IMG/VR virus record: IMGVR_UViG_3300014914_000030
Location: 1-28,549 of that record
Length of the DNA: 28,549 nucleotides
Strand: one strand, 5' to 3'
Program-made: the position numbers and the translations under genes
Shown here: one piece after another, positions 1 through 28,549 of the stretch
How positions within the stretch are numbered: position 1 is the stretch's first letter
How the letters are laid out: each line of letters starts with the position of its first letter
Notes under the pieces: generated by a model
Seen by the model: only the letters and a program-made list of their open reading frames with translations
Told to the model about the DNA's origin: nothing
Databases searched by the model: none

Positions 1-123
1 AGGATTTTGTGGTTGTATGTCGAGGATATTGAATTTTTAATTACGGAAAGCTTGAAATTACAAAAGCTTTAGGCATGAGAATAAGGAGTGGTCAAGTCTA
101 TAGCAGTAGCAGAGGAGAGAAGG
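1..123. repeat. Left inverted terminal repeat (123 bp)
   Basis: Bases 1..123 are the exact reverse complement of 28427..28549; the match breaks at 124 (A versus G). Confidence 0.98.
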
Positions 124-3535: not shown

Positions 3536-4849
3536 ATGATATGCTTGGTTAGTTTACCGTTTAAGGTGAATCTTGTTTCTCCTTTGAGTTTAGCAATTTT
3601 GAAGGCTTTAATTCCAGAATATGATTCTGTTTGTGTAGATTTATCCCCAGAGTTTAATCAATGTTTCATGAGATGGGTTTTAAAAGACAAGATTGAGGAA
3701 CTCCATGAAGAGACCTATCGTAGGGATTTTTATCCAGTTGAGTTATTGTTAAAGGGAGAGGGAGATTCCGAGTTATACAGCATTTGTCATAGCATGGCTG
3801 ATAGGATTCTTTCGTATGACCCTAAAGTGGTGTGCTTTTCTGTTCAGCTAGGCAATATTGGGACTAGTCTAACTGTCGGCAAAATCCTCAAAGATGAAGG
3901 AATAAAAGTTATTTTTGGTGGGAGTGCTTTTCTGTGGAAATCCAAGATTTATGCAAGAATGTTTCCTTGGATTGATTGTGTTGTAGAGGGAGAGGCTGAG
4001 CCAGTTTTTAGGAGTTTAATCCATAAGGTTATAAAGGGATACAAAGTTCAGAGGTTCATCATTAGTCCTATGCTTCTTGACTTAAATGAGTCGCCTATTC
4101 CAGATTACGGAGACCTAAACTTAGATAATTACCAACTTATAGGCATTGAGACTCAGAGAGGTTGTGTCAATAGGTGTTCTTTTTGCAATAATAGATTTTC
4201 ACAGTTGTACGAAGTTTATAGAGAGAAAAAAGTTGAGAGAGTTAAAAGAGAACTTGAAATCTTGAAGGAATATAACAAGCCTTTCTATTTTTGCGATAAC
4301 ATCACAAATCCTAATAGGAAGAGGCTTATTTCGTTATGTAAGGCTATAGCTCCATTAGGCATAAAATGGATGGGGGAGTTTTTGCCTAGAATTAGTTTTC
4401 AAGAGGCATATTGGTTATGGAAAAGTGGTTGTTTTTCCGTTACTTTAGGAGTTGAAAGCCTATGCGATAGAACCTTGAGGAAAATGGAGAAGCCTATCAC
4501 AGTTAGGGATATTTTAAATTCCATTGAAGCCCTAAGCATGTTTGGAATAGACATTCAAGTAAATCTAATTATTGGTTACCCTAGAGAGAGTCTGCTTGAT
4601 TTCTTGCAGACGGTTGTAAGGTTGTTTAGGGTGGAAAATAAAGTTAAGAGGTTTCTTTTTTCTGAGTTTGTAGTACCTCAAAAATCAAAAATTTACAATA
4701 ATCCAGATAAATACGGAGTAAAATTGCTTTCTAAATGTGAAAACAGTATTTTTTCAAGAGCTTTTCAATTAAAAAGTGAGTGGGAAAGAAGAAAGCAGAA
4801 ATTCTTATTAATTTTTATGGAGCTTCTCTTCAATAGGGAGTCTTTATGA
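3536..4849 (+). CDS. B12-binding-domain radical SAM protein
   Basis: ETQRGCVNRCSFC (CxxxCxxC); N-terminal PLSLAILKA, VIFGG, VVEGEAE typical of cobalamin-dependent class B radical SAM; LGVES and IIGYPRES in the barrel. Confidence 0.92.
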   Translation: MICLVSLPFKVNLVSPLSLAILKALIPEYDSVCVDLSPEFNQCFMRWVLKDKIEELHEETYRRDFYPVELLLKGEGDSELYSICHSMADRILSYDPKVVCFSVQLGNIGTSLTVGKILKDEGIKVIFGGSAFLWKSKIYARMFPWIDCVVEGEAEPVFRSLIHKVIKGYKVQRFIISPMLLDLNESPIPDYGDLNLDNYQLIGIETQRGCVNRCSFCNNRFSQLYEVYREKKVERVKRELEILKEYNKPFYFCDNITNPNRKRLISLCKAIAPLGIKWMGEFLPRISFQEAYWLWKSGCFSVTLGVESLCDRTLRKMEKPITVRDILNSIEALSMFGIDIQVNLIIGYPRESLLDFLQTVVRLFRVENKVKRFLFSEFVVPQKSKIYNNPDKYGVKLLSKCENSIFSRAFQLKSEWERRKQKFLLIFMELLFNRESL

Positions 4850-5049
4850 AGGTAGCACAGTTCCGATTTGCTATTAGTCAAGAGGGTGGTGGAGAACACG
4901 TTATGTACAACATGGCTAGAGTTCTGAAGGCAAGCGTTTTAGCTTTTGCTGTAACATCAGGAAAACTAAAAAAGAAAGGATATATCAAGGAGATAGCCTC
5001 TGATGTTGACAAGTTGATTCTGACACATAATCGTTTGGTAAAGGTGTAA
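4846..5049 (+). CDS. N-terminal fragment of a GT4 glycosyltransferase
   Basis: MKVAQF...GGGEHVMYNMARVL is the canonical GT4 N-terminal beta/GG-E/helix motif that the downstream ORF lacks. Confidence 0.7.
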   Translation: MKVAQFRFAISQEGGGEHVMYNMARVLKASVLAFAVTSGKLKKKGYIKEIASDVDKLILTHNRLVKV

Positions 5050-5059
5050 AAGTGGTCTT

Positions 5060-6025
5060 ATGGAAACGTACACAAAGAATGAGATTGAATCAATTTTGAA
5101 ATTAAGAAGGCTCTTCAGAGATGAGATTCTAAAGGAATTTGATGGGGTTGATGTTGTTGTTTTGCATTGTCCTTGGGATTTAGAGGTTTTTGATGGAGTC
5201 AATGATAAGGCTGTTGTTTTGTATGAACATAGAGCTTGTAGATTTGCAACTTTCATGTTTGATGAGATAATCAAGTATGTTGAGCCTCTACGTGCAAGAT
5301 TAGTTATTCGTGATAGAGGGTGGGTTTTGCAGAAGCATAAAGAGTTGTTCAAGAAGGCTGATTTGATTATTGTTAATAGTAAGTTTATTCAAGAGCAAAT
5401 GCTGAAGTGGTTCGGAATTGAGACCTATGTTTGTTATCCACCTATTGATTTGAGGGTTTTTCGACCAGTTAAGAATCCAAGCAGAGATTTCTTTCTTTCC
5501 GCACAGAGGGTTAACTGGCAGAAAAGAATTGACCTTCAGATTGACGCTTTTCGTGGTCTGAAAGAGAGGCTGATTATTGTCGGTAGCCCTAATGAGCCAG
5601 AGCCTAATCCTACATTGGTAGAATTAGCTAAGGATTGTCCCAATATTGAGATTTTAGGTGGTGTGAAGTTAAAGGAGCTTGTTAATTTAATGGCAAATGC
5701 TAAGGCTGTTATTCAAACTGGTTACTATGAGGATTTTGGATTAGTCCCAGTTCAAGCTTTGGCTTGTGGTACTCCAGCTATAGTGGTTGATGAAGGGGGA
5801 TTTAGAGAGACCATTCATTCCCCAAAGCTTGGTGTCAGAATAAAAAAGCCTTATCTGGAAAACTTAAGAAAAGCTGTTTTGGAGTTTGATATTAGCAGAT
5901 ATGACCCTAAGATATTGAGGGAAGAAGCTAAAAAGTATGGGTTTACGGAATTTAGAAAAAGATTCAATAAGTTACTTAAACTTGCTGTGAGGAAACATGA
6001 GGAACGATATAATTTACGTAGATAG
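5060..6025 (+). CDS. GT4 (GT-B) glycosyltransferase, main part
   Basis: IIVNSKF, YPPID, KRIDL, EDFGLVPVQALACGTP, GGFRETI. Confidence 0.92.
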   Translation: METYTKNEIESILKLRRLFRDEILKEFDGVDVVVLHCPWDLEVFDGVNDKAVVLYEHRACRFATFMFDEIIKYVEPLRARLVIRDRGWVLQKHKELFKKADLIIVNSKFIQEQMLKWFGIETYVCYPPIDLRVFRPVKNPSRDFFLSAQRVNWQKRIDLQIDAFRGLKERLIIVGSPNEPEPNPTLVELAKDCPNIEILGGVKLKELVNLMANAKAVIQTGYYEDFGLVPVQALACGTPAIVVDEGGFRETIHSPKLGVRIKKPYLENLRKAVLEFDISRYDPKILREEAKKYGFTEFRKRFNKLLKLAVRKHEERYNLRR

Positions 6026-6524
6026 GGAAAGAGGTCTCAGAGTTAGAGAGGCTGATTTAAGTAAGGTCGAAGATTTGAAGATTTTAGCTAGAGCAATCAA
6101 AAGCGATTTTTTAGCTGGTAGAGAGACTCCAACTGCGGTAAATGACCCTTTCTACAGCAAGTTCTGGAGCTATTATCTAGAGCTAGGCTGGGATATGTTC
6201 TGTTATCATCATAACCCTACAAAAACTAAATTTTTCATTGTGCTTAAAGACATGAGAACGGTTGGGTTTGCCCGTGTTAAAGAACAAAAAATACTGGGAA
6301 ATAAGGTCTTTTATCCAACGATTTATGCTAATGAGCTTGAGTATCCTTGGAGTGAGATAACTAACGATATAAGGGTCTGCATTTTTAATATGTTAAGAAG
6401 ATTTGGTTTTGATAGAGTTTTTATTGAGCTTCCTTTTGGTCATGAACTTAATAGTAAGCTTCCTTTGAGGAAGATGGTAGTAAGATTTAAAGAGTTAACA
6501 GAAATATGGGAGATGGGTTCATGA
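5997..6524 (+). CDS. Hypothetical protein, GNAT-like fold
   Basis: LRVREAD..D start and KFFIVLKDMRTVGFARV beta-hairpin resemble GNAT; acetyl-CoA motif not clear. Confidence 0.5.
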   Translation: MRNDIIYVDRERGLRVREADLSKVEDLKILARAIKSDFLAGRETPTAVNDPFYSKFWSYYLELGWDMFCYHHNPTKTKFFIVLKDMRTVGFARVKEQKILGNKVFYPTIYANELEYPWSEITNDIRVCIFNMLRRFGFDRVFIELPFGHELNSKLPLRKMVVRFKELTEIWEMGS

Positions 6525-7420
6525 CTTATGTTGAGCTATTGTTTAGGGTAAACCCAAAATTTCGACTCAAAGCTGACAAAGTTAGAGATATTTTAAATAA
6601 GAGGTTAGAACTTGAGAAAATACCGTTTGTTTTTGCTATTCATTCCATTACGGTTATGTCTAAGTGGTTAAGCGTTATTGTCGAAGTACCTAGGATTTTG
6701 GAAGTAAAGCCTTATGTATTGAACTTAAAATTCTTAGCAATCAGCCTTGGTGGTTTTGTTATGGATTCTCTTCTAGATTATGGTGTTAGATTTTTAACTT
6801 ATGAAGTGCATGGGTTGACTAGTTCTCTAGTTTATCATAAGGATTGGAGAAAGGAGAAGGTTGCTTTATGTGTTATCGCAAAGGATGAAGAACCCCATGT
6901 AGCAGACTTCATGAAATGTGTTGAGGGATGGTTTGATGATATTGTTGTTGGGGTAGATACCAGAACTGTGGATAGTACTTGGGATAGGTTTGCAGAAAGA
7001 GGGGCTAGGTGCTTCTATATTGATTGGGAAGACCATTTTGGTGAATTTAGGAATAGGACTATGAAATTTGTTGCTCCAGAGATAGATTGGGTTTTCTGGT
7101 TGGATGTTGATGAGTACCCAGAAGATAGGCTTCTTGAGAATTTGAAAGGTTTAGTTCAAACGAAAATTTATGATGCGTATTCTTTCATTAGAGTTAATCT
7201 GGAAACAAAAACTGAAGAGAGGGTTGTTAGGCTTTTTAGAAGGTCTAAGGGGAAGTGGGAAGGGAGAGTTCATGAATCTGTTTCTGGTATTGATTCAAAG
7301 AGGATTTGTGAGACAGACTTTAAGATTTTTCACATTCAGAGATGGATTAAAGAAGGTGGAAGTGTAGCTGAGGAACGTAATGCATTTTACCGTAAACTAG
7401 AAAATATGGATTCAGCCTAG
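6506..7420 (+). CDS. GT2 (GT-A) glycosyltransferase with extra N-terminal domain
   Basis: VALCVIAKDEE, WEDHFGEFRN, WVFWLDVDE (DxD), RLFR...WEGRVHE. Confidence 0.88.
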   Translation: MGDGFMTYVELLFRVNPKFRLKADKVRDILNKRLELEKIPFVFAIHSITVMSKWLSVIVEVPRILEVKPYVLNLKFLAISLGGFVMDSLLDYGVRFLTYEVHGLTSSLVYHKDWRKEKVALCVIAKDEEPHVADFMKCVEGWFDDIVVGVDTRTVDSTWDRFAERGARCFYIDWEDHFGEFRNRTMKFVAPEIDWVFWLDVDEYPEDRLLENLKGLVQTKIYDAYSFIRVNLETKTEERVVRLFRRSKGKWEGRVHESVSGIDSKRICETDFKIFHIQRWIKEGGSVAEERNAFYRKLENMDSA

Positions 7421-7442
7421 AAGATTCTAGGTGTAGCGTCTC

Positions 7443-9656
7443 TTGAGCATTACTATAAGAGCATTAGATGAGTATGGAGAGTTTTCGTTTAACGGTATTA
7501 ATGAGTTTGGTCTTCAGAGGGTTGGGTTTCTTGTTGAGTTTGGTAGCCGTGTAATTGTTCAGCAAATTGAGGCTGTTTTTACGGATTATGCTGTAGGAGA
7601 ATACATTATCCAGACTATTCACGGAATGTTTGTGGAAGTTGTTGAGACGGTCATTGTAGCTGAGTATCTGAGAAAAAGGTCTGAAAAGGTGATGGTTGAT
7701 GTAAGCATAGGGTCAGATTATCTGAGAAAGGCTACTCTTAAGGTCTTTACTGACAGTAGCATTGTTTCTGATAGGATTATAAAAGAGGCTATTAGATGTT
7801 TTGTTGACTCTGTGGTTTCAAGTGATTATGTACGGAGAGAGGTCAGTAAAAGTATTTTGGACTTGTCCAGAGTTAGCGATTGGATAGGGAAGACTTTAGC
7901 TAAAGTGCTTGTTGATTCTGAGGTTACGGTTGATTGGATTTCTAAGGCTATTTCTAGGAGCTTCATAGACTCCAGCAAATCCTATGATTATGTCAGTAAG
8001 GCTTCAATTAAGAGTTTTAAGGATGTAGGAAAGGGAATTGATAGAATTTCAAAAAGTGTCGGCGTATCAAGGCTAGATACGGTTCTTGTCTCTGATTGGA
8101 TTTCAAAAGAGTTGCTTAAGGCTGTTTTGGATTTAGGTAAGGTTGCTGATTGGGTCAGCACTTTAAAGGCTAAAATTATTGAGGTAAAGGATGTTGTGTT
8201 TCCAGACTACTCCATAGCTAAAGATTCTGTACTGGTTAAGAGAGATTCAAGCTTAATTAGTGATTTCTACAGTAAGAGTGTTGAAAAGGTTGCTACTGAC
8301 TCTGGGGTTATAAGTGATAGAGTGTCTCTTGCGTTTTCTAAAGTTCTGGTTGATTCTGGTGTTGTAAGCGATTACTTCAGTAAAGCTATTTCCAAAGTAG
8401 CAAGAGACATAGGAAAGGGAGTGGATTGGATTTCTAAGGACATTTTGGCTTCTATAGTTGAAAGTGCAAGGGTTTCTGATTGGGTTTCAAGAGATATGGT
8501 CTATTCGCTTATGGATTCAATTTCTGTAGCTGACTATATTAGAAGGGAGTTCAGTAAGAGTTTCAGAGATTATGTGGTAGGCGAATACGTAATTACAAAA
8601 ACTGCTACTCTGCACAGAAGCTATGCTGATGTTGTCAAATCGGTTGACTTTGTTTCTAAGGGTCTTTTCATCCCTCTGAAGGATACAGTAATAAGCTCAG
8701 ATTACCTTGTGAAAGAAATATCAAGAGTTGTTTCTGATGTCGCAAGAGTCCTCGATTGGATAGGTAGAAGGGTTGCAGTTACTGTTTCAGACTTAGTTAA
8801 AGGTCTAGATTATGTCAGTAAGAGCCTTGCAGTAAACATTTCTGATTTGGCTAAGGCTATTGATTGGATTGTTGTTCCTACGGTTAAGTTGATTGTTGTC
8901 AAGGATGTTGTGTTTCCAGACTTCTCTACAGCTAAAGGAGTTGAAAAGCCATTTAGAGAGGTTATCTCCGTCATTGACTTGAAGGCTGTTAAGGATATTG
9001 CTAAGAGATTTGTTGATTATGTTATAGTTAGAGACCAAGCAATTAGAACTAGGATTATTGAGGTCTTTGACCGTGTTATTGCTGACTTTGAGGTTGTCAA
9101 GGGCTTAAGTCCAGCTATTAGGGATTTGGTTAAGTCGGTTGATGTCATTACTAAGCTTAGATATACACTTACTGGAATTGATGTTAGACGTGTCTATTTC
9201 CACAAGTATCTAGGCGATATTATTGAGGATACGGATGAAATCAATAGGGTTGACTCTTCTAAGAACTTGCTGAACATGATTAAGAATTTGGCTAGTAAAA
9301 TGGGGGTTGCAGATGACCCATACATTAGTGCAGATATTTCTAAGCTTGAGGAAATCGTAGGGACAATGGAGTACGTTAAGGATGGAGAGTACGTTTATGC
9401 TAGGCATGTTAATGTGTTTGTGGATTACATGACCTATGCCATTGATGTTGTGCAGTTGCTTTATGATAAGTGGAAGTCTGCTAAGGGGACTAGTCTTCCA
9501 GAGGTTGAGTACTGGCTTGAAATGGCTAAGGGAAGAAAGGATTTAATGCGTACTGTCAAGTTTGGTGATATTGTTCTGACTAGAGACCACAACTTGATTA
9601 TAGATACTTTGAAGCCCTTAGAGTGCAGTATCAGAGTTATGGATAGGGAGTGGTAG
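7443..9656 (+). CDS. 737-aa fibre-like protein with 18-aa repeats
   Basis: Over 25 units such as DWIGKTLAKVLVDSEVTV / DWISKAISRSFIDSSKSY / DYFSKAISKVARDIGKGV, then a distinct C-terminal domain. Confidence 0.8.
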   Translation: MSITIRALDEYGEFSFNGINEFGLQRVGFLVEFGSRVIVQQIEAVFTDYAVGEYIIQTIHGMFVEVVETVIVAEYLRKRSEKVMVDVSIGSDYLRKATLKVFTDSSIVSDRIIKEAIRCFVDSVVSSDYVRREVSKSILDLSRVSDWIGKTLAKVLVDSEVTVDWISKAISRSFIDSSKSYDYVSKASIKSFKDVGKGIDRISKSVGVSRLDTVLVSDWISKELLKAVLDLGKVADWVSTLKAKIIEVKDVVFPDYSIAKDSVLVKRDSSLISDFYSKSVEKVATDSGVISDRVSLAFSKVLVDSGVVSDYFSKAISKVARDIGKGVDWISKDILASIVESARVSDWVSRDMVYSLMDSISVADYIRREFSKSFRDYVVGEYVITKTATLHRSYADVVKSVDFVSKGLFIPLKDTVISSDYLVKEISRVVSDVARVLDWIGRRVAVTVSDLVKGLDYVSKSLAVNISDLAKAIDWIVVPTVKLIVVKDVVFPDFSTAKGVEKPFREVISVIDLKAVKDIAKRFVDYVIVRDQAIRTRIIEVFDRVIADFEVVKGLSPAIRDLVKSVDVITKLRYTLTGIDVRRVYFHKYLGDIIEDTDEINRVDSSKNLLNMIKNLASKMGVADDPYISADISKLEEIVGTMEYVKDGEYVYARHVNVFVDYMTYAIDVVQLLYDKWKSAKGTSLPEVEYWLEMAKGRKDLMRTVKFGDIVLTRDHNLIIDTLKPLECSIRVMDREW
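8187..8922 (+). repeat. 22-bp exact direct repeat pair in fibre gene (8187..8208 and 8901..8922)
   Basis: AAGGATGTTGTGTTTCCAGACT occurs twice, 714 bp apart, both encoding KDVVFPD. Confidence 0.85.
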
Positions 9657-9659
9657 GGC

Positions 9660-10157
9660 TTGGGGCTAAAGCTCAATTTGGGTTGTGGATTGGATAAGAG
9701 GGAAGGTTATGTGAATATTGATGTTAGGGAAGATGTTGAGCCAGACATGGTTATTGATTTAGAAAAGGAGCTTCTGCAAAGGTTTGAGGATGAAAGTGTG
9801 GATGAGATTTTGGCTAAGGATTTCTTGGAGCATTTAAGCTGGAGAGTTGTTGAGACCTTTCTTAGGGATTGTCATAGGGTCTTGAAGCCTAACGGTAGAA
9901 TCTATATTCAGACTCCAGATTTGGAAGCTATTGCCAAAAAGGTTATTCTTAATCCCAATTTCAAGTTCGGAAGTCTCTATGGCTTTAAGGCTATTAGCTA
10001 TTGGGTTTATGGTGGTCAAGAGTACCCAGAGAATACTCACAAGTCTGGTTTTACAATGAGTAGTTTAAAACGGTTGCTTGAAGACATTGGTTTTGAGGTT
10101 TTGGAGTTGAAAAATGATAGTGGTACGAATATTGTTTGCTGGGCTAGGAAGCCCTAG
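9660..10157 (+). CDS. Class I SAM-dependent methyltransferase
   Basis: LKLNLGCG...GYVNID, FEDESVDEI, FLEHL, RVLKPNG. Confidence 0.92.
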   Translation: MGLKLNLGCGLDKREGYVNIDVREDVEPDMVIDLEKELLQRFEDESVDEILAKDFLEHLSWRVVETFLRDCHRVLKPNGRIYIQTPDLEAIAKKVILNPNFKFGSLYGFKAISYWVYGGQEYPENTHKSGFTMSSLKRLLEDIGFEVLELKNDSGTNIVCWARKP

Positions 10158-10855
10158 AGATTTCTTATTTCATGCCAAAAAACTGTATTTAGAACTGGAT
10201 GTTTTACGCAAGGGTGGAATAACCTACCGTTTTCTCCCAAAAATTCTCCATGGTCAGATGTTATCACAACTTTTCTATTTTTAGGTATTTTTGGCAGAAG
10301 ATTTGCTTTTATCTCTTTTAGGACTATTTGTAGGTTTTCTTTGTAAGCTTCTTTTATGATGTCTAGTGGGGGTAGATGTTTGGGATAAGTTACTCCATCA
10401 ATGATTGTATTTAATGGGTCGGGTTTCCATGCTTCAAATGTTACTCTGATTTTCCCTATGCTTGGGAAGTGTGGTTGCATATAGTGAATTATGACTCTTT
10501 CATTTTTAAGGTAAGGAAGGGAAGCTTTGGTAACTTCTCTGGGGGGAACTGTTTTAAGCTCATCATCCCAACCAAACTCCCATACGTCTATAACCTTCTT
10601 AAAGTGCTCTAACCCTAAGAAATCTCCAACCTTTATTTTGCTGTTACAAAAGGGGTTTGCTGAGACATATACGTATGGATACCTTGAAGGGAAATTCATG
10701 GTCAGCCATGTTTGAGTATCACTTGATTCAACTTCTAACTTTAAAAGCTCTCCCTTGAAAGGAGTAAACTTCTCATAATAATCATATCTGCAAGCATCCA
10801 GAACTATTAAGATGTCCCAAGACCACTTGTGAATATACTGAGTTGGTGCTTTCAT
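10154..10855 (-). CDS. Alkaline phosphatase/sulfatase-superfamily protein
   Basis: LIVLDACRYD, IHYMQPHFP, VITSDHGEFLGENG..HP metal-binding motifs. Confidence 0.88.
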   Translation of the reverse strand: MKAPTQYIHKWSWDILIVLDACRYDYYEKFTPFKGELLKLEVESSDTQTWLTMNFPSRYPYVYVSANPFCNSKIKVGDFLGLEHFKKVIDVWEFGWDDELKTVPPREVTKASLPYLKNERVIIHYMQPHFPSIGKIRVTFEAWKPDPLNTIIDGVTYPKHLPPLDIIKEAYKENLQIVLKEIKANLLPKIPKNRKVVITSDHGEFLGENGRLFHPCVKHPVLNTVFWHEIRNL

Positions 10856-10861
10856 TTGTAC

Positions 10862-11932
10862 TCAAAGATATTGTAGAAGAATATCTCTTAGCTGTTCTCC
10901 TATTTTATTCCATGTGAATTTTTCCTTAATGGTAGTTTCGGCGTATTCTTTTGCTCTTGCTTTGTAGTCATCTAGGTTGTCTATGATGTGGATTAGTCTA
11001 TCTACTGCTTTCTCTATTTTCATTTCTACTCCTATGCCTACGTGTATTGGGTTTCCTTCTAGCACTTGTTTTGATGGTTGGGAGTCAACTAAGCTCCATT
11101 TTGGAAGGAAGTCTTCCCATGCTCCACCTTTAGCTCCTATTACTGGTATTCCTCTTGCTAGTCCTTCTAATGCTGGATGTTCAAAACCACCACCACGTGA
11201 GGTTAGCAGAAAGACATCACATAGGTCGAAAAGCTCCATTTTTTGCTGGTCTGTTAACCATCCACTATAGACTTGTCCTTTCATTTCGTATTTTCCATCT
11301 TTTACGTATTCTGGGAAGTAGCCTACGCCAGCACCAGTTTTAAGAACTAGGAGAACATTGTTTCTTTCCGCTAGGGTTCTTCTGTAGATTTCAACTAGTA
11401 GGTCGAAGCCTTTTCTGTATGGTGAGTGCACTATGTAGCTGAGTAAGAGTATTCTGTTTTCTTCTTTCTTGAGTTTTGCTAGATGTTGGAATGTACTTGG
11501 TGGTTGTGGTGGTGTATCTATCCATTCTGGGGTTACTCCATGCGGAAGTACGTAAACTGGTTTTTTGACCCCAGATTTTATGTATGATTGCCTAGCCCAG
11601 TTTGAGGGGACTATTAGGGCTGTAGCGTATTGGGTTAGCTTTACTGCATATTTGCTGATTTGGTTTGAGTCTGCAACGTCTATTCCTATTAGGGCTGAGA
11701 ATTTGGGTACTTTTAGGGATAGGTTTCTTTCAAGCTTTTGGAATGGGTAAAAGTAAGGATGTAAGAAAACTACTGGGTTTCCGACTATGTGTATGAAGGG
11801 GAAGGCTAGCTCATCTATTTCTTCAACCCTAAACCATTGTCTTAGCTGGGCTACATGATGTACGCCTATGCTGTTCCATGAAACATGCTTAAAGAAGGGA
11901 TAGACGTACCAGATTGACTTTCTTGATAGCAT
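10862..11932 (-). CDS. GT4 (GT-B) glycosyltransferase
   Basis: IVPSNW, VLPHGV, RKGFDLL, SRGGGFEHPALEGLARGIPVI. Confidence 0.92.
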   Translation of the reverse strand: MLSRKSIWYVYPFFKHVSWNSIGVHHVAQLRQWFRVEEIDELAFPFIHIVGNPVVFLHPYFYPFQKLERNLSLKVPKFSALIGIDVADSNQISKYAVKLTQYATALIVPSNWARQSYIKSGVKKPVYVLPHGVTPEWIDTPPQPPSTFQHLAKLKKEENRILLLSYIVHSPYRKGFDLLVEIYRRTLAERNNVLLVLKTGAGVGYFPEYVKDGKYEMKGQVYSGWLTDQQKMELFDLCDVFLLTSRGGGFEHPALEGLARGIPVIGAKGGAWEDFLPKWSLVDSQPSKQVLEGNPIHVGIGVEMKIEKAVDRLIHIIDNLDDYKARAKEYAETTIKEKFTWNKIGEQLRDILLQYL

Positions 11933-19001: not shown

Positions 19002-19004
19002 ATC

Positions 19005-19011
19005 AAAAAAA
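19005..19011 (-). terminator. Oligo-T terminator after MCP
   Basis: T7 run on the minus strand about 35 nt downstream of the MCP stop. Confidence 0.4.
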
Positions 19012-19046
19012 TGGGGAACTTGAGGGTATTAAGGGTTTAGGCTAGT

Positions 19047-19421
19047 CTAGTAGGCTATAGCCCATCCACAGACTACGTTAATGATTTCATCACAGATGTC
19101 TGAGTTAAGTCCATAGGCGTTCACGAAGTAAGTCTTCAGAGCCGTAGCGATTGTCTTTGCTGAGTCTCCAGACTGGTGTAGGACATGTCTATAGAGCTTG
19201 GTGGCAAATGCCAAATAGGTGGCTCTTAAGCCACCCGTTACACCATAGTTGTCAAGGATTGGTCGAACCATGTCCCTTACCGTTCCGATTGCGTTGAGTC
19301 CAGCTTGTGCTCTGTCAAGGGCTACACTCTGAACATCTGTGAACCTTGTGCTAATTACTGTGGGGTTGAACTTCGCTTGGTATTTCTTGTACATGTCAAG
19401 ACCGTCTCTATAGAGGGGCAT
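19047..19421 (-). CDS. Major capsid protein, SIRV2/rudivirus-type (Adnaviria)
   Basis: KYQAKFNPTVIST, LDNYGVTGGLRATYLAFATK, LKTYFVNAYGLNSDICDEIINVV align with recalled rudivirus MCP motifs (KWQAKF..NPTVAST, YGITGPNRAIYQGFGLK, LKGYYISAFNANPQVLDAVVNII); AAGGTGA SD. Confidence 0.9.
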   Translation of the reverse strand: MPLYRDGLDMYKKYQAKFNPTVISTRFTDVQSVALDRAQAGLNAIGTVRDMVRPILDNYGVTGGLRATYLAFATKLYRHVLHQSGDSAKTIATALKTYFVNAYGLNSDICDEIINVVCGWAIAY

Positions 19422-20360: not shown

Positions 20361-20608
20361 GTTTTCTTTTTAGTTTTTTCTTTGATTATTCCTAGCTTTT
20401 TGAGTATTTTAACTTGTATTCCTATGAGAATTGCCATTACAAGGAATCCTAGGGGTATGCCTATTCCGATTCCTATAGCTCCAAGCAAAGCTCCAAAAAT
20501 ACACACAACTATGAAGGATACTAGGATGTCGAATAGAAATAGGATTACGCCTAAAAGTAGGTTAAGTATGTTTTTCGCTAGGTCTAGTAGGGCTTTTAGT
20601 TTCTTCAA
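20354..20608 (-). CDS. Small membrane protein (two TM segments)
   Basis: Long hydrophobic stretch with GIGIGIPLG turn and Lys-rich ends. Confidence 0.75.
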   Translation of the reverse strand: MKKLKALLDLAKNILNLLLGVILFLFDILVSFIVVCIFGALLGAIGIGIGIPLGFLVMAILIGIQVKILKKLGIIKEKTKKKTQ

Positions 20609-20906
20609 CCTTTTTCACCTCTATAAATGTGTATCTTCCTTCTTTTTTAATGAACACGAAGGGTCTTACCCTATATGTTCCAGCTAGGCTGTATAGGTCT
20701 TGGAATTTCTTGTGGAGCTTGGACAAGTCTTTAGGTGCTTCTGCTTTTTTGCATTGAACCAGCCAGATTTCGTTTTGGTCTGGGAAGAAGGCTATTAGGT
20801 CTGCTACGCCTAAGCTTCTGCTACTGCGTATTACGTATGCTCCTTTCTGCTTTAGGAGTTCTCTGCACCTATGCTCTACTAGGTATCCATATCTGTACGC
20901 CGACAC
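20562..20906 (-). CDS. hjc: Archaeal Holliday junction resolvase (PD-(D/E)xK)
   Basis: YRYGYLVE...L...GAYVIRSSRSLGVADLIAF...WLVQCK. Confidence 0.88.
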   Translation of the reverse strand: MSAYRYGYLVEHRCRELLKQKGAYVIRSSRSLGVADLIAFFPDQNEIWLVQCKKAEAPKDLSKLHKKFQDLYSLAGTYRVRPFVFIKKEGRYTFIEVKKVEETKSPTRPSEKHT

Positions 20907-25018: not shown

Positions 25019-25021
25019 AGA

Positions 25022-25876
25022 CTAGACCACCGCAACTACTGGGCTTAAAATCTTGTGTAGCTCATCAAACATTCTGTTCTTGGTTACAATGTCTTGACGG
25101 ACATTATGCCAAATCCTCTCGGTAACATCATTGTAGGTATCCCAGACGGTCTTGGACTCATCGAACCACACAAGCTCAGTTCCTTCCGTCTTAATGTAAG
25201 GTGGTAACAGCTTTCTTGGAAGTCTGCTTTTAGCTATGCTCTCAGCAATTTCCTCATTAAGCTGAAGCTCAACCATCTTACGATAAGCCTCTAACACCTT
25301 CTCCATAGCATTGATTACATCCATTGTACGTTTCAGAATATTATCCATGTCAACCTTCAAGCCCTTAGTGTGCTTGTGGTAAAACCTCGCAAGCTCTCTG
25401 TAGCCCATGAAAACACCATTAGAGCACATTTCTCTATATGTGAATCCAGTAACGCTAAACGCTAGTGTTCCATCAATGCTGTTTCTGAAGGCAAATCCAA
25501 TCTTGCACCTATCCCTTCCGTCTATCTCATGCCATTCTGGGAGAGTATAGACCAAATAGACCTTCCAAGAATCCTTGCTGAAATAGGCGTTACCCCACTC
25601 AGTAGGTAGCCTAGTCTTCTCAAGCAGAGGCTCTGCATTCAGCCTACTAGCTATTTCATCAGCTACTTGCTTGACAACCTCATTAGGAAGAACTTGATAG
25701 CCCCTACCGACAATTGCTACAAGCCTTCCGTTCTTGAGAATAGCCTTGTAAGGTGTCTGCTTGTCATTGTATTTTAGGTATGCCTCTGTAATGTTGTATT
25801 CTTTCCAAGTCTCATCTATTTTACCTACATCAAATACAATCTTCATCTCGGACACGGCTACATCCCCCCTTTTCAT
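25022..25876 (-). CDS. DUF932/DUF945-like phage/plasmid protein
   Basis: IVGRGYQVLPNE, FRNSIDG, YREMCSNG, TVWDTYNDVTE match the family motif order. Confidence 0.8.
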   Translation of the reverse strand: MKRGDVAVSEMKIVFDVGKIDETWKEYNITEAYLKYNDKQTPYKAILKNGRLVAIVGRGYQVLPNEVVKQVADEIASRLNAEPLLEKTRLPTEWGNAYFSKDSWKVYLVYTLPEWHEIDGRDRCKIGFAFRNSIDGTLAFSVTGFTYREMCSNGVFMGYRELARFYHKHTKGLKVDMDNILKRTMDVINAMEKVLEAYRKMVELQLNEEIAESIAKSRLPRKLLPPYIKTEGTELVWFDESKTVWDTYNDVTERIWHNVRQDIVTKNRMFDELHKILSPVVAVV

Positions 25877-26790: not shown

Positions 26791-27270
26791 TTAAGGCTTA
26801 GCTGTTATAATCAAGTCTGGTCGAATAGCTAATCTTTTCCCTACCTTGCACTCCTCAAGCTCAATGAACTCATTGAACTCCTCAACAACCTCTCTAGTTA
26901 TGTCCTTGTAGAAGGCTTTAGCTTCATGGTATAATCCACTATCATCATAGTCTCCTACAAGGTAAATCTCATCTCCAGCCCATCTTCCACAAGTCTTAAA
27001 CCTTCCTTTCCCTAGAGGAGTCCTAGAAATTCTGCTTATAGTCTCTAAAGCCTTTTCCTTAGTCTTCTTGTCTTTTGCATCCCAGTAGAGCCTCTCAGCC
27101 TCTTTAAACTCTGGCTCAAAGTTGCACATGCCAGTACCATCCATTGGAGCTTTAGCTACTAGCCAGCACAGAAGTCTAGCCTCGTTATTAGCAAGCCATT
27201 CCCAGAGCTTAGAGCCACCTTTAACGTACTCCTTTTTGGTCTTATTTACAAGTAGGAAGTACTGCCCCAT
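26791..27270 (-). CDS. Conserved viral hypothetical protein (MGQY...GRWAGD..VGDY type)
   Basis: Motifs MGQYFLLVNKTKKEY and GRWAGDEIYLVGDY; strong promoter upstream. Confidence 0.8.
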   Translation of the reverse strand: MGQYFLLVNKTKKEYVKGGSKLWEWLANNEARLLCWLVAKAPMDGTGMCNFEPEFKEAERLYWDAKDKKTKEKALETISRISRTPLGKGRFKTCGRWAGDEIYLVGDYDDSGLYHEAKAFYKDITREVVEEFNEFIELEECKVGKRLAIRPDLIITAKP

Positions 27271-27325: not shown

Positions 27326-27373
27326 CAATTACACAAAATCGAAAAAGATAAAAAATTGGGAAATTTTGGGAGC

Positions 27374-28357
27374 TTAGCTCAGCATGTCAAGGATTTTCTG
27401 TTTAGCCTTAGCCTTGTAGTCTTCCAATAGCTGTTTTACTTGACTTCTGAGTGCTTCAGCCTTAGCTCTGAGCTTTTCGTAAATCTCCCTATCCCAGTAG
27501 CTATAAATGGCTTCTATGAGTATTCTCCTAAACTCTTCTGGTACGTAAGCAACTAGTGAATCAAGCTCTACAATATACTCATGCTCATAATTCTTGTACC
27601 TTGGGTCTCTCTGCAATTTGGCTAAGGTTTCTGCGTCTTCTGGTCTAGGTGGAAGGTTGTACTTCCTAACTTGCTCTGGAGTAACAGCAAGCCTTATCAG
27701 TTGCACCTTATCCTCTGGAAGACCAAAATAGTCTAAGGCTTCCTTGAGAAACCTCTCAATGTCAACTCCAGAAGGGTCTAAGTCTCCCAAGTACAATATA
27801 ATGACTTTATCATGTTTCTCAAGCTCATACCTCAATGCTTGAACATTGTTGTAGATAAATGTCCAGCTTGAATATCCTCTGTTAACCCTTATCAAAACTC
27901 CTAGTCCTTCTGTCCAGTTTTGAATTGTAGAGCTTAAAGCTTCCTTCTCTATCCAAATCTCAACTGCATAAGGCTGTTCTGCCCATCTACCGACAGTTAT
28001 GAAAGGCTGTAGGTAGTCAAAGGTTTCTGCTAGCATTTTGTCAATGTCAAGCTCTTCAAGTCTCTGCTTTAGGGTCTCCTCAAACCTTTCAACCTCATCA
28101 TCTCTGAATCTTCCATCATCAATATTTCCATAGACAAGTCTGGTTTTGTCCTCAAGGAAATCCCACTCATATCTCCCTTGCTTCCTAGCATTAACTAGCT
28201 TCCTTGACAGTTGCTTGTAGCTACTCCTTGTGTTTGGAATTATGTTCTTGCTGACCAAGTAGTAGAACAATGTTCTAAGTGTAGGCTTGACTCCTTGACT
28301 ACTGAAGTACCTTAAAGCTTCATCCACATGTTCTAGTACTTCTCCCCAATTTATCAC
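27374..28357 (-). CDS. Topoisomerase VI-A/Spo11-related (Mini-A-like) WHD-TOPRIM protein
   Basis: TLRTLFYYLV (catalytic Tyr region), VEIWIEKEAL, RGYSS, ILYLGDLDPSG (DxD), VELDSL; probable GTG start at 28357 with GGTGA SD. Confidence 0.82.
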   Translation of the reverse strand: MINWGEVLEHVDEALRYFSSQGVKPTLRTLFYYLVSKNIIPNTRSSYKQLSRKLVNARKQGRYEWDFLEDKTRLVYGNIDDGRFRDDEVERFEETLKQRLEELDIDKMLAETFDYLQPFITVGRWAEQPYAVEIWIEKEALSSTIQNWTEGLGVLIRVNRGYSSWTFIYNNVQALRYELEKHDKVIILYLGDLDPSGVDIERFLKEALDYFGLPEDKVQLIRLAVTPEQVRKYNLPPRPEDAETLAKLQRDPRYKNYEHEYIVELDSLVAYVPEEFRRILIEAIYSYWDREIYEKLRAKAEALRSQVKQLLEDYKAKAKQKILDMLS

Positions 28358-28426
28358 CTTAATCACCGTAATATACTTAAGTGCATTAGGTGTATATAAG
28401 CATTGTGGTCTAGTCCACAACCAAAC

Positions 28427-28549
28427 CCTTCTCTCCTCTGCTACTGCTATAGACTTGACCACTCCTTATTCTCATGCCTAAAGCTTTTGTAATTTCAAGC
28501 TTTCCGTAATTAAAAATTCAATATCCTCGACATACAACCACAAAATCCT
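28427..28549. repeat. Right inverted terminal repeat (123 bp)
   Basis: Exact reverse complement of 1..123. Confidence 0.98.

What the first reader, a model, noticed from the sequence alone, without database searches (positions are those of the whole stretch)
27374..28357. Stand-alone Topo VI-A/Spo11-like (Mini-A-like) protein abutting the ITR
WHD tyrosine and TOPRIM acidic motifs look intact, and no GHKL B subunit is evident. As the first gene from the end of a linear genome lacking a Rep, it could cleave or resolve genome termini (with Hjc), stay attached as a terminal protein, or interfere with host Topo VI. Mini-A proteins are known from mobile elements, but their role is unresolved.
Basis: partly seen in the sequence, partly recalled or inferred. 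Interest (0 to 1): 0.7.

Follow-up and report, generated by a model that had tools for sequence, protein, structure and literature searches.

The report
Mini-A topoisomerase-like gene, archaeal rod virus
The last gene at the right end of this 28.5-kb linear archaeal rod-shaped virus genome encodes an intact stand-alone relative of the DNA-cutting subunit of topoisomerase VI/Spo11 (a "Mini-A" protein), but comparison with relatives shows it is a movable accessory gene, not a fixture of the genome end.

Summary
Window 27374-28357 (-) is an intact 327-aa ORF. It has the RxxFY catalytic-tyrosine motif (R28/Y32), the Toprim E137 and D192xD194, and a C-terminal VELDSL box. It matches PHROG 6247 "DNA topoisomerase" (3e-48) and Pseudomonas phage NP1 gp49, a founding Mini-A (3e-24). 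The best structural match of its AF2 model is M. mazei Topo VI-A. No GHKL partner, Rep, protein-primed polymerase or conserved neighbour gene was found.

The window is a complete rudivirus-like (Adnaviria) genome with a 123-bp ITR. The gene starts 70 nt inside the ITR and has its own TATA box, Shine-Dalgarno site and T-rich terminator.

The terminal position is not conserved:
- In the collinear 30-kb sister virus the same promoter-plus-gene cassette sits mid-genome, between a glycosyltransferase gene and the capsid gene.
- In other elements it lies 2.5-14 kb from contig ends.
- 40 of 42 capsid-anchored relatives have no copy within ±10 kb of the capsid gene.
- One 27.4-kb relative, read to 98.6%, has none at all.

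It is therefore a new member of the known Mini-A family, carried as an accessory cassette. A Mg-dependent, tyrosine-linked DNA breaking and rejoining activity in viral replication or recombination is the likeliest role. A terminus-specific role is possible but unsupported.

The parts
27374..28357 (-). Mini-A coding sequence (327 aa plus stop). 5Y-CAP/winged-helix part is about residues 1-75, a clade-specific helical insert about 76-120, Toprim about 125-235, the T2BI-like box 263-268, and a long C-terminal helix 290-326.
   Evidence: ORF. PHROG 6247 'DNA topoisomerase' 3.3e-48. tblastn to phage NP1 Mini-A 3e-24. Alignments A1 and A2. AF2 model with pLDDT 87. Foldseek top hit Topo VI-A 9o0g_A.
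28262..28276 (-). Codons R28-T-L-F-Y32: the RxxFY motif with the presumed catalytic tyrosine (Y32 = 28264-28262).
   Evidence: Invariant R28 and Y32. They align with the RQLYY motif of phage NP1 Mini-A, whose tyrosine Takahashi et al. call catalytic (PMC7671362).
27947..27949 (-). Codon of E137, the Toprim glutamate (IEKEAL).
   Evidence: Invariant.
27776..27784 (-). Codons D192-L-D194, the Toprim DxD metal-binding motif (GDLDPSG).
   Evidence: Invariant. The weak PF21180 and JetD profile hits fall on this region.
27554..27571 (-). Codons V263-E-L-D-S-L268: the T2BI-like box (VELDSL, against the Mini-A signature xWELDAL).
   Evidence: signature from PMC7671362. MAFFT offsets the archaeal and phage boxes by three columns, so their equivalence is my reading.
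28393..28399 (-). TATA box of the Mini-A transcription unit (TTATATA).
   Evidence: Conserved upstream of Mini-A in the window, L015 and L004. Promoter function is inferred.
28361..28366 (-). Shine-Dalgarno-like GGTGAT, 3 nt upstream of the GTG start.
   Evidence: Conserved in the window and L015. Function is inferred.
28403..28420 (.). Near-perfect palindrome TTGTGGACTAGACCACAA just upstream of the TATA box. It is one copy of the over-represented GTGGWCWAGWC motif.
   Evidence: inverted repeat I6. (16 copies against 2.85 expected). Conserved in L015 and partly in L004.
27340..27356 (-). T-rich tracts downstream of the stop codon: a terminator-like end of the cassette.
   Evidence: A similar CCAATT-T-run follows the sister virus's Mini-A. 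Function is inferred.
28427..28549 (.). Right inverted terminal repeat. It contains an exact GTGGTCAAGTC motif copy at 28452-28462.
   Evidence: The independent assembly L015 ends inside this repeat.
1..123 (.). Left inverted terminal repeat.
26791..27270 (-). 159-aa ORF directly downstream, co-oriented, with its own TATA-like box. It has no family match and is absent from the other Mini-A loci, so it is not a general partner.

Best explanation
Shown:
- The gene encodes a genuine member of the Mini-A subfamily of type IIB topoisomerase A-subunit homologues: winged-helix/5Y-CAP with a catalytic tyrosine, Toprim with E and DxD, and a T2BI-like box.
- It has no ATPase subunit.
- It sits in a previously uncharacterised rudivirus-like (Adnaviria) archaeal virus from Guaymas-type hydrothermal sediment.
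- It is a self-contained transcription unit (own promoter, Shine-Dalgarno site and T-rich terminator).
- It behaves as an accessory, relocatable cassette. Here it occupies the variable right arm next to the ITR. In the sister virus the same cassette sits in the insertion hotspot between the capsid and glycosyltransferase genes. Most relatives have none.

Inferred mechanism:
- A homodimer binds duplex DNA.
- Y32 of one subunit, together with the Mg2+ site (E137/D192/D194) of the other, attacks the backbone.
- This gives a 5'-phosphotyrosyl-linked break that can be resealed without ATP.

Inferred role: making or resealing breaks in viral DNA during replication or recombination. That could mean seeding recombination-dependent replication or relieving and resolving tangled intermediates, alongside the virus's Hjc-type resolvase. 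It is an auxiliary role, not an essential terminus-specific one.
For: Identity:
- PHROG 6247 3.3e-48 over the full length.
- tblastn hits to 78 phage records, including NP1 gp49 (3e-24, 84% coverage). NP1 is a Mini-A representative in PMC7671362.
- All catalytic motifs are invariant.
- AF2 pLDDT 87. The only significant PDB fold match is Topo VI-A (9o0g_A, E 5e-4, prob 1.0).
- 5/23 homologues touch PF21180.
- The profile finds 7,788 50%-identity clusters, mostly about 300 aa.

Stand-alone:
- No GHKL family in 43 scanned ORFs.
- No conserved neighbour across 23 Mini-A loci.

Accessory and relocatable:
- The sister virus is collinear from about 7.4 to 22.6 kb, but its Mini-A lies between GT348 and the capsid gene.
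- About 60 nt of upstream promoter sequence moved with the gene.
- 40/42 capsid-anchored loci of at least 10 kb lack it.
- Relative Ga0190363_1000335 was read for 26,983 of 27,370 nt and has none.
- The capsid-GT spacer is a 0.1-4 kb insertion hotspot.

Replication/recombination link:
- In phages NP1 and PaMx25 Mini-A sits between DNA ligase and a Sak4 annealing protein, near a Cas4-like exonuclease, a helicase and a primase.
- The window encodes an Hjc-like resolvase.
Against: - No biochemical activity of any Mini-A is reported in the searched literature, so cleavage, religation and dimerisation are all inferred from Topo VI/Spo11.
- Sequence profiles alone do not reach Top6A in the PDB, and the window protein has no Pfam hit of its own.
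- The T2BI box has V where the Mini-A signature has W.
- Absence in relatives is firm for one near-complete genome only. Most other contigs are incomplete or were seen only within ±10 kb of the capsid gene, and a terminal gene is the easiest to miss.
- This virus has no recognisable replication initiator, so an essential role here is not excluded.
Confidence: 0.5

Rival explanations
1. Terminus enzyme. Mini-A recognises the ITR or the palindromic ITR-ITR junction of replicative concatemers. It nicks or cuts there through Y32 and reseals the strands, so initiating replication or regenerating hairpin ends. It would replace the Rep of Sulfolobus rudiviruses and work with Hjc.
For: - The gene is the first one inside the ITR.
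- No Rep, protein-primed polymerase or primase was recognised, and there is no match to SIRV2 gp16.
- Hjc is present.
- A tyrosine transesterase is chemically suited to cut-and-rejoin reactions.
- An exact copy of the motif found in the Mini-A promoter palindrome lies in each ITR.
- A replication-initiator role has been proposed for skuldvirus Mini-A.
Against: - The position is not conserved: mid-genome in the collinear sister virus, and 2.5-14 kb from contig ends elsewhere.
- Most relatives with the same capsid and core genes lack it, and one near-complete relative certainly does. The family's ends are therefore maintained without it.
- Homologues are common in tailed phages, two of them deposited as circular records.
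- The over-represented motif is scattered over the whole genome, which looks like a transcription-factor operator.
Confidence: 0.12
2. Selfish mobile cassette. Mini-A acts like a homing endonuclease. It breaks a target site in genomes that lack it during co-infection, and recombinational repair copies in the promoter-gene-terminator cassette.
For: - A single-gene insertion of about 1.14 kb sits in an otherwise collinear genome, on the opposite strand to its neighbours.
- The promoter travels with the gene.
- Distribution is patchy and there is no partner gene.
- In the sister virus the cassette is flanked by direct AAGGGTTT copies. The empty site in the window has one copy, and the window's cassette starts with one exactly at the ITR boundary.
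Against: - The 8-mer is not enriched overall (4 copies against 2 expected).
- It occurs in only 5/51 capsid-GT spacers, so the flanking repeat may be chance.
- Mini-A identity between the two viruses (68%) is like that of their core genes (59-67%). That fits old vertical descent with rearrangement as well as it fits transfer.
- A covalent tyrosine intermediate is unknown among homing nucleases.
Confidence: 0.1
3. Host-directed or counter-defence factor. It is an early-expressed enzyme that damages or remodels host DNA, or blocks a host defence. It would be carried in the variable terminal arm where rudiviruses keep such genes.
For: - It lies in the strain-specific right arm (22.7-28.5 kb), which is absent from all relatives. 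In SIRV2 the terminal arms hold anti-CRISPR genes (annotation).
- It has accessory status.
- It shows weak Toprim-level similarity to the Wadjet nuclease JetD.
Against: - No similarity to any known anti-defence protein.
- In phages it sits inside the replication/recombination module, not among host-takeover genes.
- The JetD similarity is marginal (E 0.015 for the window protein).
Confidence: 0.1
4. Interference with host topoisomerase VI: a decoy A subunit that poisons or hijacks host Top6B.
For: - The likely hosts are archaea, which have Topo VI. The sister contig is binned in an Archaeoglobales MAG.
- The fold is that of Top6A.
Against: - Homologues occur in phages of Pseudomonas, Xylella and Flavobacterium. 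That these hosts have no Topo VI is my own knowledge.
- A decoy does not need the strictly conserved Y, E and DxD.
- Mini-A lacks the N-terminal CAP segment that contacts Top6B (PMC7671362).
Confidence: 0.05
5. Terminal protein: it stays covalently attached to the 5' ends and primes replication.
For: 5'-phosphotyrosyl chemistry, a linear genome with an ITR, and the gene's position at the end.
Against: - No protein-primed family B polymerase in the genome. The largest ORFs are structural-type or glycan enzymes.
- Relatives lack the gene.
- Homologues occur in phages, two of them deposited as circular records.
Confidence: 0.02

Closest known systems
[quoted passage not shown] 2020, PMC7671362), e.g. 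Pseudomonas phage NP1 gp49
   Same: - About 300-aa stand-alone protein with the RxxY/FY tyrosine motif, the Toprim E and DxDxxG, and a C-terminal ELDAL-type box.
- No B subunit, and virus-encoded.
- Direct BLAST-level homology (28% identity, 3e-24).
   Different: - Two clade-specific inserts: about residues 76-120, and the EDAETLAKL segment around 240-250.
- A longer C-terminal helix.
- V in place of the signature W.
- The carrier is a rod-shaped Adnaviria virus with ITRs, not a tailed phage.
Topo mini-A of Asgard-archaeal skuldviruses and wyrdviruses (bioRxiv 10.1101/2021.07.29.453957)
   Same: A stand-alone Mini-A in small archaeal virus genomes that lack other recognisable replication proteins. 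A replication-initiator role has been proposed there.
   Different: - Skuldviruses are described there as circular, tailless icosahedral viruses in which all three members carry it.
- Here the genome is linear and rod-type, and the gene is accessory within the family.
Topoisomerase VI subunit A / Spo11
   Same: Same fold (best PDB match 9o0g_A) and the same catalytic tyrosine, glutamate and DxD arrangement.
   Different: - No B subunit or GHKL ATPase.
- Shorter N-terminus.
- Sequence profiles do not reach Top6A in the PDB.
- No Pfam TP6A_N or Toprim hit for this protein.
JetD/MksG nuclease of Wadjet
   Same: Topo VI-A-like Toprim domain. Weak profile matches: 13/23 homologues, best 4e-5; window protein 0.015.
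   Different: - No JetABC genes.
- The similarity is limited to about 30 residues around the DxD.
- Mini-A keeps the catalytic tyrosine. That JetD acts hydrolytically without one is my own knowledge.
Rep (ORF119) and Hjc system of Sulfolobus rudiviruses
   Same: Same virus type: capsid protein 34-36% identical, shared glycosyltransferases and large fibre protein, and an Hjc-like resolvase. Rep is also a tyrosine nicking-joining enzyme acting at the ITR (own knowledge).
   Different: - No Rep homologue here.
- Mini-A is unrelated in fold.
- The ITR is 123 bp, whereas rudiviral ITRs are roughly 1-2 kb (own knowledge).

Membership tests
Mini-A (type IIB topoisomerase A-like, stand-alone) | 5Y-CAP/winged-helix with an RxxY/FY motif carrying the catalytic tyrosine | tested here: met
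   R28-T-L-F-Y32. R and Y are invariant in 23 archaeal and 3 phage sequences.
Mini-A (type IIB topoisomerase A-like, stand-alone) | Toprim with a glutamate and DxDxxG | tested here: met
   E137 and D192-L-D-P-S-G197, all invariant.
Mini-A (type IIB topoisomerase A-like, stand-alone) | C-terminal T2BI box with the signature xWELDAL | tested here: inconclusive
   VELDSL here and (I/V)VELDAL in the clade: ELDAL is kept but W is replaced by V. The V resembles the Topo VIII box RVELNAM.
Mini-A (type IIB topoisomerase A-like, stand-alone) | About 300 aa with no B subunit or GHKL partner | tested here: met
   327 aa. No GHKL family in 43 ORFs. No conserved neighbour in 23 loci.
Mini-A (type IIB topoisomerase A-like, stand-alone) | Sequence homology to founding members | tested here: met
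   tblastn to phage NP1 gp49 3e-24 over 84% of the query. NP1 is listed as a Mini-A in PMC7671362. PHROG 6247 3.3e-48.
Mini-A (type IIB topoisomerase A-like, stand-alone) | Monophyly with Mini-A, separate from Topo VI and Topo VIII, in a phylogeny | not tested
   No Topo VI or Topo VIII sequences were on hand to build the tree.
Canonical Topo VI subunit A / Spo11 | Top6A fold | tested here: met
   Foldseek top hit 9o0g_A/C, E 5.4e-4, prob 1.0, 180 aligned columns. The global TM-score is only 0.33.
Canonical Topo VI subunit A / Spo11 | Matches the Pfam Top6A/Spo11 models above threshold | tested here: not met
   No hit for the window protein. Only 5/23 homologues touch PF21180, best 2.4e-5. No PDB Top6A found by HMMER.
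Canonical Topo VI subunit A / Spo11 | Co-encoded B subunit (GHKL ATPase plus transducer) | tested here: not met
   None in the window or next to homologues.
Topo VIII | B-like ATPase moiety fused or adjacent, and an RVELNAM box | tested here: not met
   327 aa with no ATPase domain. The box is VELDSL.
JetD/MksG (Wadjet nuclease) | JetD profile match over the whole protein, with jetABC neighbours | tested here: not met
   The PADLOC JetD3 hit has E 0.015 and covers residues 171-202 only. No SMC-type genes in the window.
Terminal protein / protein-primed replication | Co-encoded protein-primed family B DNA polymerase | tested here: not met
   No polymerase family in any scanned ORF.
Hairpin telomere resolvase (protelomerase type) | Tyrosine-recombinase-like catalytic core | tested here: not met
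   No such Pfam, PHROG or PDB match. Any resolvase-like activity would be by analogy only.
Rudivirus-like Adnaviria virus (the genome as a whole) | SIRV2-type capsid protein and a linear genome with ITRs | tested here: met
   PF12193 1.3e-20. 34-36% identity to Rudiviridae capsid proteins. 123-bp ITR. Shared glycosyltransferases and large fibre protein.

The most novel reading that the evidence does not exclude
Mini-A genes are self-propagating DNA-breaking cassettes. A Spo11-like tyrosine transesterase cuts Mini-A-less viral genomes at intergenic target sites (the capsid-GT hotspot, the ITR boundary). Recombinational repair then copies in the promoter-gene-terminator unit. This would be a homing system built on topoisomerase chemistry. 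A related reading that is also not excluded: in this Rep-less rod virus the enzyme cuts and reseals the ITR junction to regenerate hairpin ends.
Probability: 0.1. Interest if true: 0.8.

Novelty: new member of a known kind. Interest (0 to 1): 0.4.

Why it matters
Mini-A is a very large family: 7,788 clusters at 50% identity matched the profile. It is the only type IIB topoisomerase branch that lacks an ATPase partner. No activity has been reported for any member, and it bears on how Topo VI and Spo11 arose.

This case adds a well-defined archaeal clade and places Mini-A in a rod-shaped Adnaviria virus. I found no earlier report of that in the papers searched.

It also supplies a natural experiment: two collinear viruses with the same cassette at different sites, and many relatives without it. 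That comparison argues Mini-A is an auxiliary, movable function and not a core replication or terminus enzyme. This narrows the hypotheses worth testing at the bench.

Tried and rejected
- **Direct searches that gave nothing.** Pfam scan of the protein: no real hit. HMMER against PDB sequences, with the single sequence and with the profile: only noise, Top6A not reached. Foldseek against viral BFVD models: nothing below 1e-3, only generic Toprim proteins. Megablast of the terminal 2.5 kb against phage records: no match.
- **Shared termini.** I scanned IMG/VR with the first 16 nt of the ITR. Apart from the window itself, the matches were to unrelated contigs, nearly all at internal positions.
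- **Complete relatives.** None of the 23 fully held contigs I tested has an ITR, so none is complete. I therefore extended one 27.4-kb relative by two look-ups.
- **A 'Mini-B' partner.** I clustered ORFs within ±5 kb of 23 Mini-A genes. Nothing recurs except shadow ORFs of Mini-A itself and a glycosyltransferase in three rod viruses.
- **AAGGGTTT as a target-site duplication.** The placement is suggestive, but the 8-mer is not enriched and occurs in only 5/51 capsid-GT spacers. I kept it only as a weak lead.
- **Hjc variant linked to Mini-A.** I asked whether the Hjc-like protein's E-to-Q change in the ExK motif correlates with Mini-A presence. It does not: the Q is conserved across a whole subclade that includes relatives with no Mini-A in the held ±10-kb stretch.
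- **Samediviridae or Ahmunviridae.** Samediviruses are 12-22 kb, encode MCP-1 and MCP-2, and carry MCM, PCNA and primase. This virus has none of those.
- **NCBIfam.** Nothing for this protein; one homologue touches a Topo VI-A model at 7e-4.
Full report
**What the window is**

The 28,549-bp window is the whole of IMG/VR contig UViG_3300014914_000030. Its ends are a perfect 123-bp inverted terminal repeat. An independent ENA assembly of a 96%-identical variant (L015) breaks off inside that repeat, as expected for a true genome end.

The genome is rudivirus-like:
- ORF 19047-19421 (-) matches the Sulfolobus rod-virus coat protein family PF12193 (1.3e-20). It is 34-36% identical to the capsid proteins of Rudiviridae.
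- Two glycosyltransferases and the C-terminus of the 1,217-aa protein also match SIRV2.
- The rest of the genome is glycan and modification enzymes (GT4, GT2, radical SAM, methyltransferases), small DNA-binding proteins, a DUF932 protein and an Hjc-like resolvase.
- No replication initiator, polymerase, primase, helicase or GHKL ATPase was recognised in 43 ORFs scanned with Pfam. tblastn against SIRV2 found no counterpart of its Rep, gp16.
- The sister contig is binned in a Guaymas Basin Archaeoglobales MAG. That hints at the habitat and only weakly at the host.
- It is not a samedivirus. Those are 12-22 kb and carry MCM, PCNA and primase.

**The gene**

The ORF runs from 28462 to 27374 on the minus strand.
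- Homologues begin there.
- L015 has an ATG at that codon.
- A TATA box (28399-28393) and a GGTGAT Shine-Dalgarno site (28366-28361) are conserved just upstream.

The 105-nt extension into the ITR in public gene calls is therefore probably an annotation artefact. T-rich tracts follow the stop codon.

**Identity**

- Pfam gives nothing for this protein, and HMMER does not reach Top6A in the PDB.
- PHROG 6247 "DNA topoisomerase" matches end to end at 3.3e-48.
- tblastn finds 78 phage records, 60 of which match over at least 80% of the query. One is Pseudomonas phage NP1 gp49 (3e-24), which Takahashi et al. used as a representative Mini-A (PMC7671362).
- In alignments with 22 archaeal homologues and three phage Mini-As, several motifs are invariant: R28..Y32 (RTLFY), E137 (IEKEAL) and D192xD194 in GDLDPSG. 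The C-terminal box reads VELDSL against the Mini-A signature xWELDAL.
- An AF2 model built on the alignment is confident (pLDDT 87). Its only significant PDB matches are the A subunits of M. mazei Topo VI (9o0g_A and 9o0g_C, E 5.4e-4, probability 1.0).
- Five of 23 homologues touch the Top6A/Spo11 Toprim model.
- JetD profiles match weakly, and only around the DxD.
- The profile of this clade finds 7,788 clusters at 50% identity in 1.84 billion proteins. Most are about 300 aa.

I file it as a Mini-A with one reservation: W is replaced by V in the T2BI box.

**Stand-alone status**

No ORF in the window matches a GHKL or Topo VI-B family. Across 23 Mini-A loci (archaeal viruses, IMG/VR contigs, three phages) no neighbouring gene recurs. 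The 159-aa ORF just downstream is unique to this virus and its near-identical variant.

**Position in relatives**

The closest Mini-A-bearing relative is a 30-kb virus known from four records: L002/L057/L172 are one contig and L004 is an independent assembly. It is collinear with the window from about 7.4 to 22.6 kb, with core proteins 42-67% identical. Its Mini-A (68% identical) lies at about 18.5-19.5 kb. It sits on the opposite strand between the glycosyltransferase and the capsid gene, where the window has a 45-nt spacer. About 60 nt of upstream sequence, including the palindrome and the TATA box, and a similar T-rich tail moved with the gene. So the unit that relocated is a promoter-gene-terminator cassette.

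Position of Mini-A in other carriers:

| Contig size | Distance of the gene from a contig end |
|---|---|
| 33 kb | 8.5 kb |
| 29 kb | about 14 kb |
| 21 kb | 4.1 kb |
| 31 kb | 2.5 kb |
| 20 kb | 7.4 kb |
| 26.5 kb | 11.6 kb |

A capsid-anchored scan of metagenome contigs found 207 related loci. Of the 42 loci of at least 10 kb among the 80 kept, only the window and the sister virus have Mini-A within ±10 kb of the capsid gene. The whole right arm of the window (DUF932, the 96- and 159-aa ORFs, Mini-A) is absent from all of them.

Incomplete contigs could hide a terminal gene, and none of the 23 fully held contigs I tested has an ITR. I therefore extended one 27,370-nt relative to 26,983 nt (98.6%). 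It starts in a G/T-rich terminal repeat region, has the capsid gene and Hjc, and has no Mini-A.

The capsid-GT spacer varies from 0.1 to 4 kb among relatives and holds other inserted genes. Mini-A thus occupies variable regions in both viruses that carry it.

**Mechanism**

What is shown: intact and strongly conserved catalytic residues of a type IIB A subunit, no ATPase, an autonomous transcription unit, and accessory, relocatable behaviour.

What is inferred from established Topo VI/Spo11 chemistry: a homodimer in which the tyrosine of one subunit and the Mg2+ site of the other make a 5'-phosphotyrosyl break that can be resealed.

For the role, the best clue is the phage context. In NP1 and PaMx25 the gene sits between DNA ligase and a Sak4 annealing protein, next to a Cas4-like exonuclease, a helicase and a primase. 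Rudiviruses replicate through branched, recombination-rich intermediates that need a resolvase (my own knowledge of the SIRV2 literature, not checked here), and this virus keeps an Hjc-type gene. I therefore favour an auxiliary break-and-rejoin function in viral replication or recombination. My confidence in that function is modest.

No activity of any Mini-A is reported in the papers searched, up to 2026. Reviews still call the function unexplored.

**Rivals**

- *ITR-specific initiator or resolvase.* This remains chemically attractive in a genome without Rep. An exact copy of the promoter-palindrome motif sits in each ITR. But the family evidently maintains its ends without Mini-A, and the motif is scattered genome-wide like an operator.
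- *Terminal protein.* This role lacks the required polymerase.
- *Host Topo VI interference.* This does not fit the phage homologues (my own knowledge that their bacterial hosts lack Topo VI), nor the conserved active site.
- *Homing-type selfish cassette.* This fits the single-gene indel, the travelling promoter, the patchy distribution and the direct AAGGGTTT copies flanking the sister's cassette. Those repeats are not statistically compelling.
- *Host-takeover or counter-defence.* This fits the variable-arm location but has no other support.

**Verdict**

- The identification is right.
- The argument from position to a terminus function is not supported.
- It is a new member, and a well-populated archaeal clade, of a known family whose function is unknown.
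- The useful new point is that it behaves as a movable accessory cassette in rod-shaped archaeal viruses.

Noticed in passing
window 88-98, 25020-25030, 28405-28418, 28452-28462 and 11 further sites: The motif GTGGWCWAGWC (up to 1 mismatch) occurs 16 times against 2.85 expected; 0 of 100 shuffles reach 16. Exact copies lie in both ITRs and, as a palindrome, just upstream of the Mini-A TATA box. It is probably the operator of a virus-encoded DNA-binding protein.
   Followed up: partly
window 7-14 and 28536-28543; L193:1-200: TTGTGGWY is over-represented (14 copies against 4.3 expected) and sits at the very termini. The left end of the 27.4-kb relative is a G/T-rich run of GGTTG-type repeats and shares an 11-mer with the window's terminus. 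This suggests telomere-like terminal repeats in this virus family.
   Followed up: partly
L004:9925-9932 and 11034-11041; window 19031-19038 and 28423-28430: Direct AAGGGTTT copies flank the Mini-A cassette in the sister virus. One copy sits in the window's empty site, and one lies exactly at the ITR inner boundary where the window's cassette begins. The 8-mer is not enriched overall, so this may be chance.
   Followed up: partly
window 19002-19046; L072:8762-12772, L081:8937-11563, L115:10372-14136: The spacer between the capsid gene and the glycosyltransferase gene is an insertion hotspot (0.1-4 kb) among relatives. Three relatives carry a 404-429-aa protein with a conserved DAHGVAT motif there. 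Its function is unknown.
   Followed up: no
window 20562-20906 (-): The Hjc-like resolvase has E11, D36, Q51 and K53, so Q replaces the usual glutamate of the ExK motif. The Q is conserved across a whole subclade of relatives, whether or not Mini-A was found in the stretch held for them.
   Followed up: yes
window 28358-28462 (-): Public gene calls give this protein 362 aa by starting at a GTG inside the ITR. Homologue N-termini, an ATG in the L015 variant and the conserved promoter all point to the start at 28357.
   Followed up: yes
window 25022-25876 (-); L009:843-1646: A DUF932 protein lies in the same strain-specific right arm. Another Mini-A-bearing 29-kb element also encodes a DUF932 protein. 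Only 2 of 6 contexts examined have both, so no firm association.
   Followed up: partly
window 3536-11932: A large block of glycan and modification genes in a 28-kb virus: a B12-binding radical SAM enzyme, GT4 and GT2 glycosyltransferases, SAM methyltransferase(s), and a 737-aa protein whose C-terminal part resembles a DUF2341 protein of the sister virus.
   Followed up: no
P0204, P0221, P0242: A few 737-773-aa proteins carry the Mini-A-like region at their C-terminus (residues about 530-750). They may be Topo VIII-like fusions or new architectures.
   Followed up: no
L172 (QMZE01000005.1): The complete-length sister virus contig (30,061 bp) is deposited as part of an Archaeoglobales MAG from Guaymas Basin. 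This is either a host hint or a viral contig mis-binned into a cellular genome.
   Followed up: no
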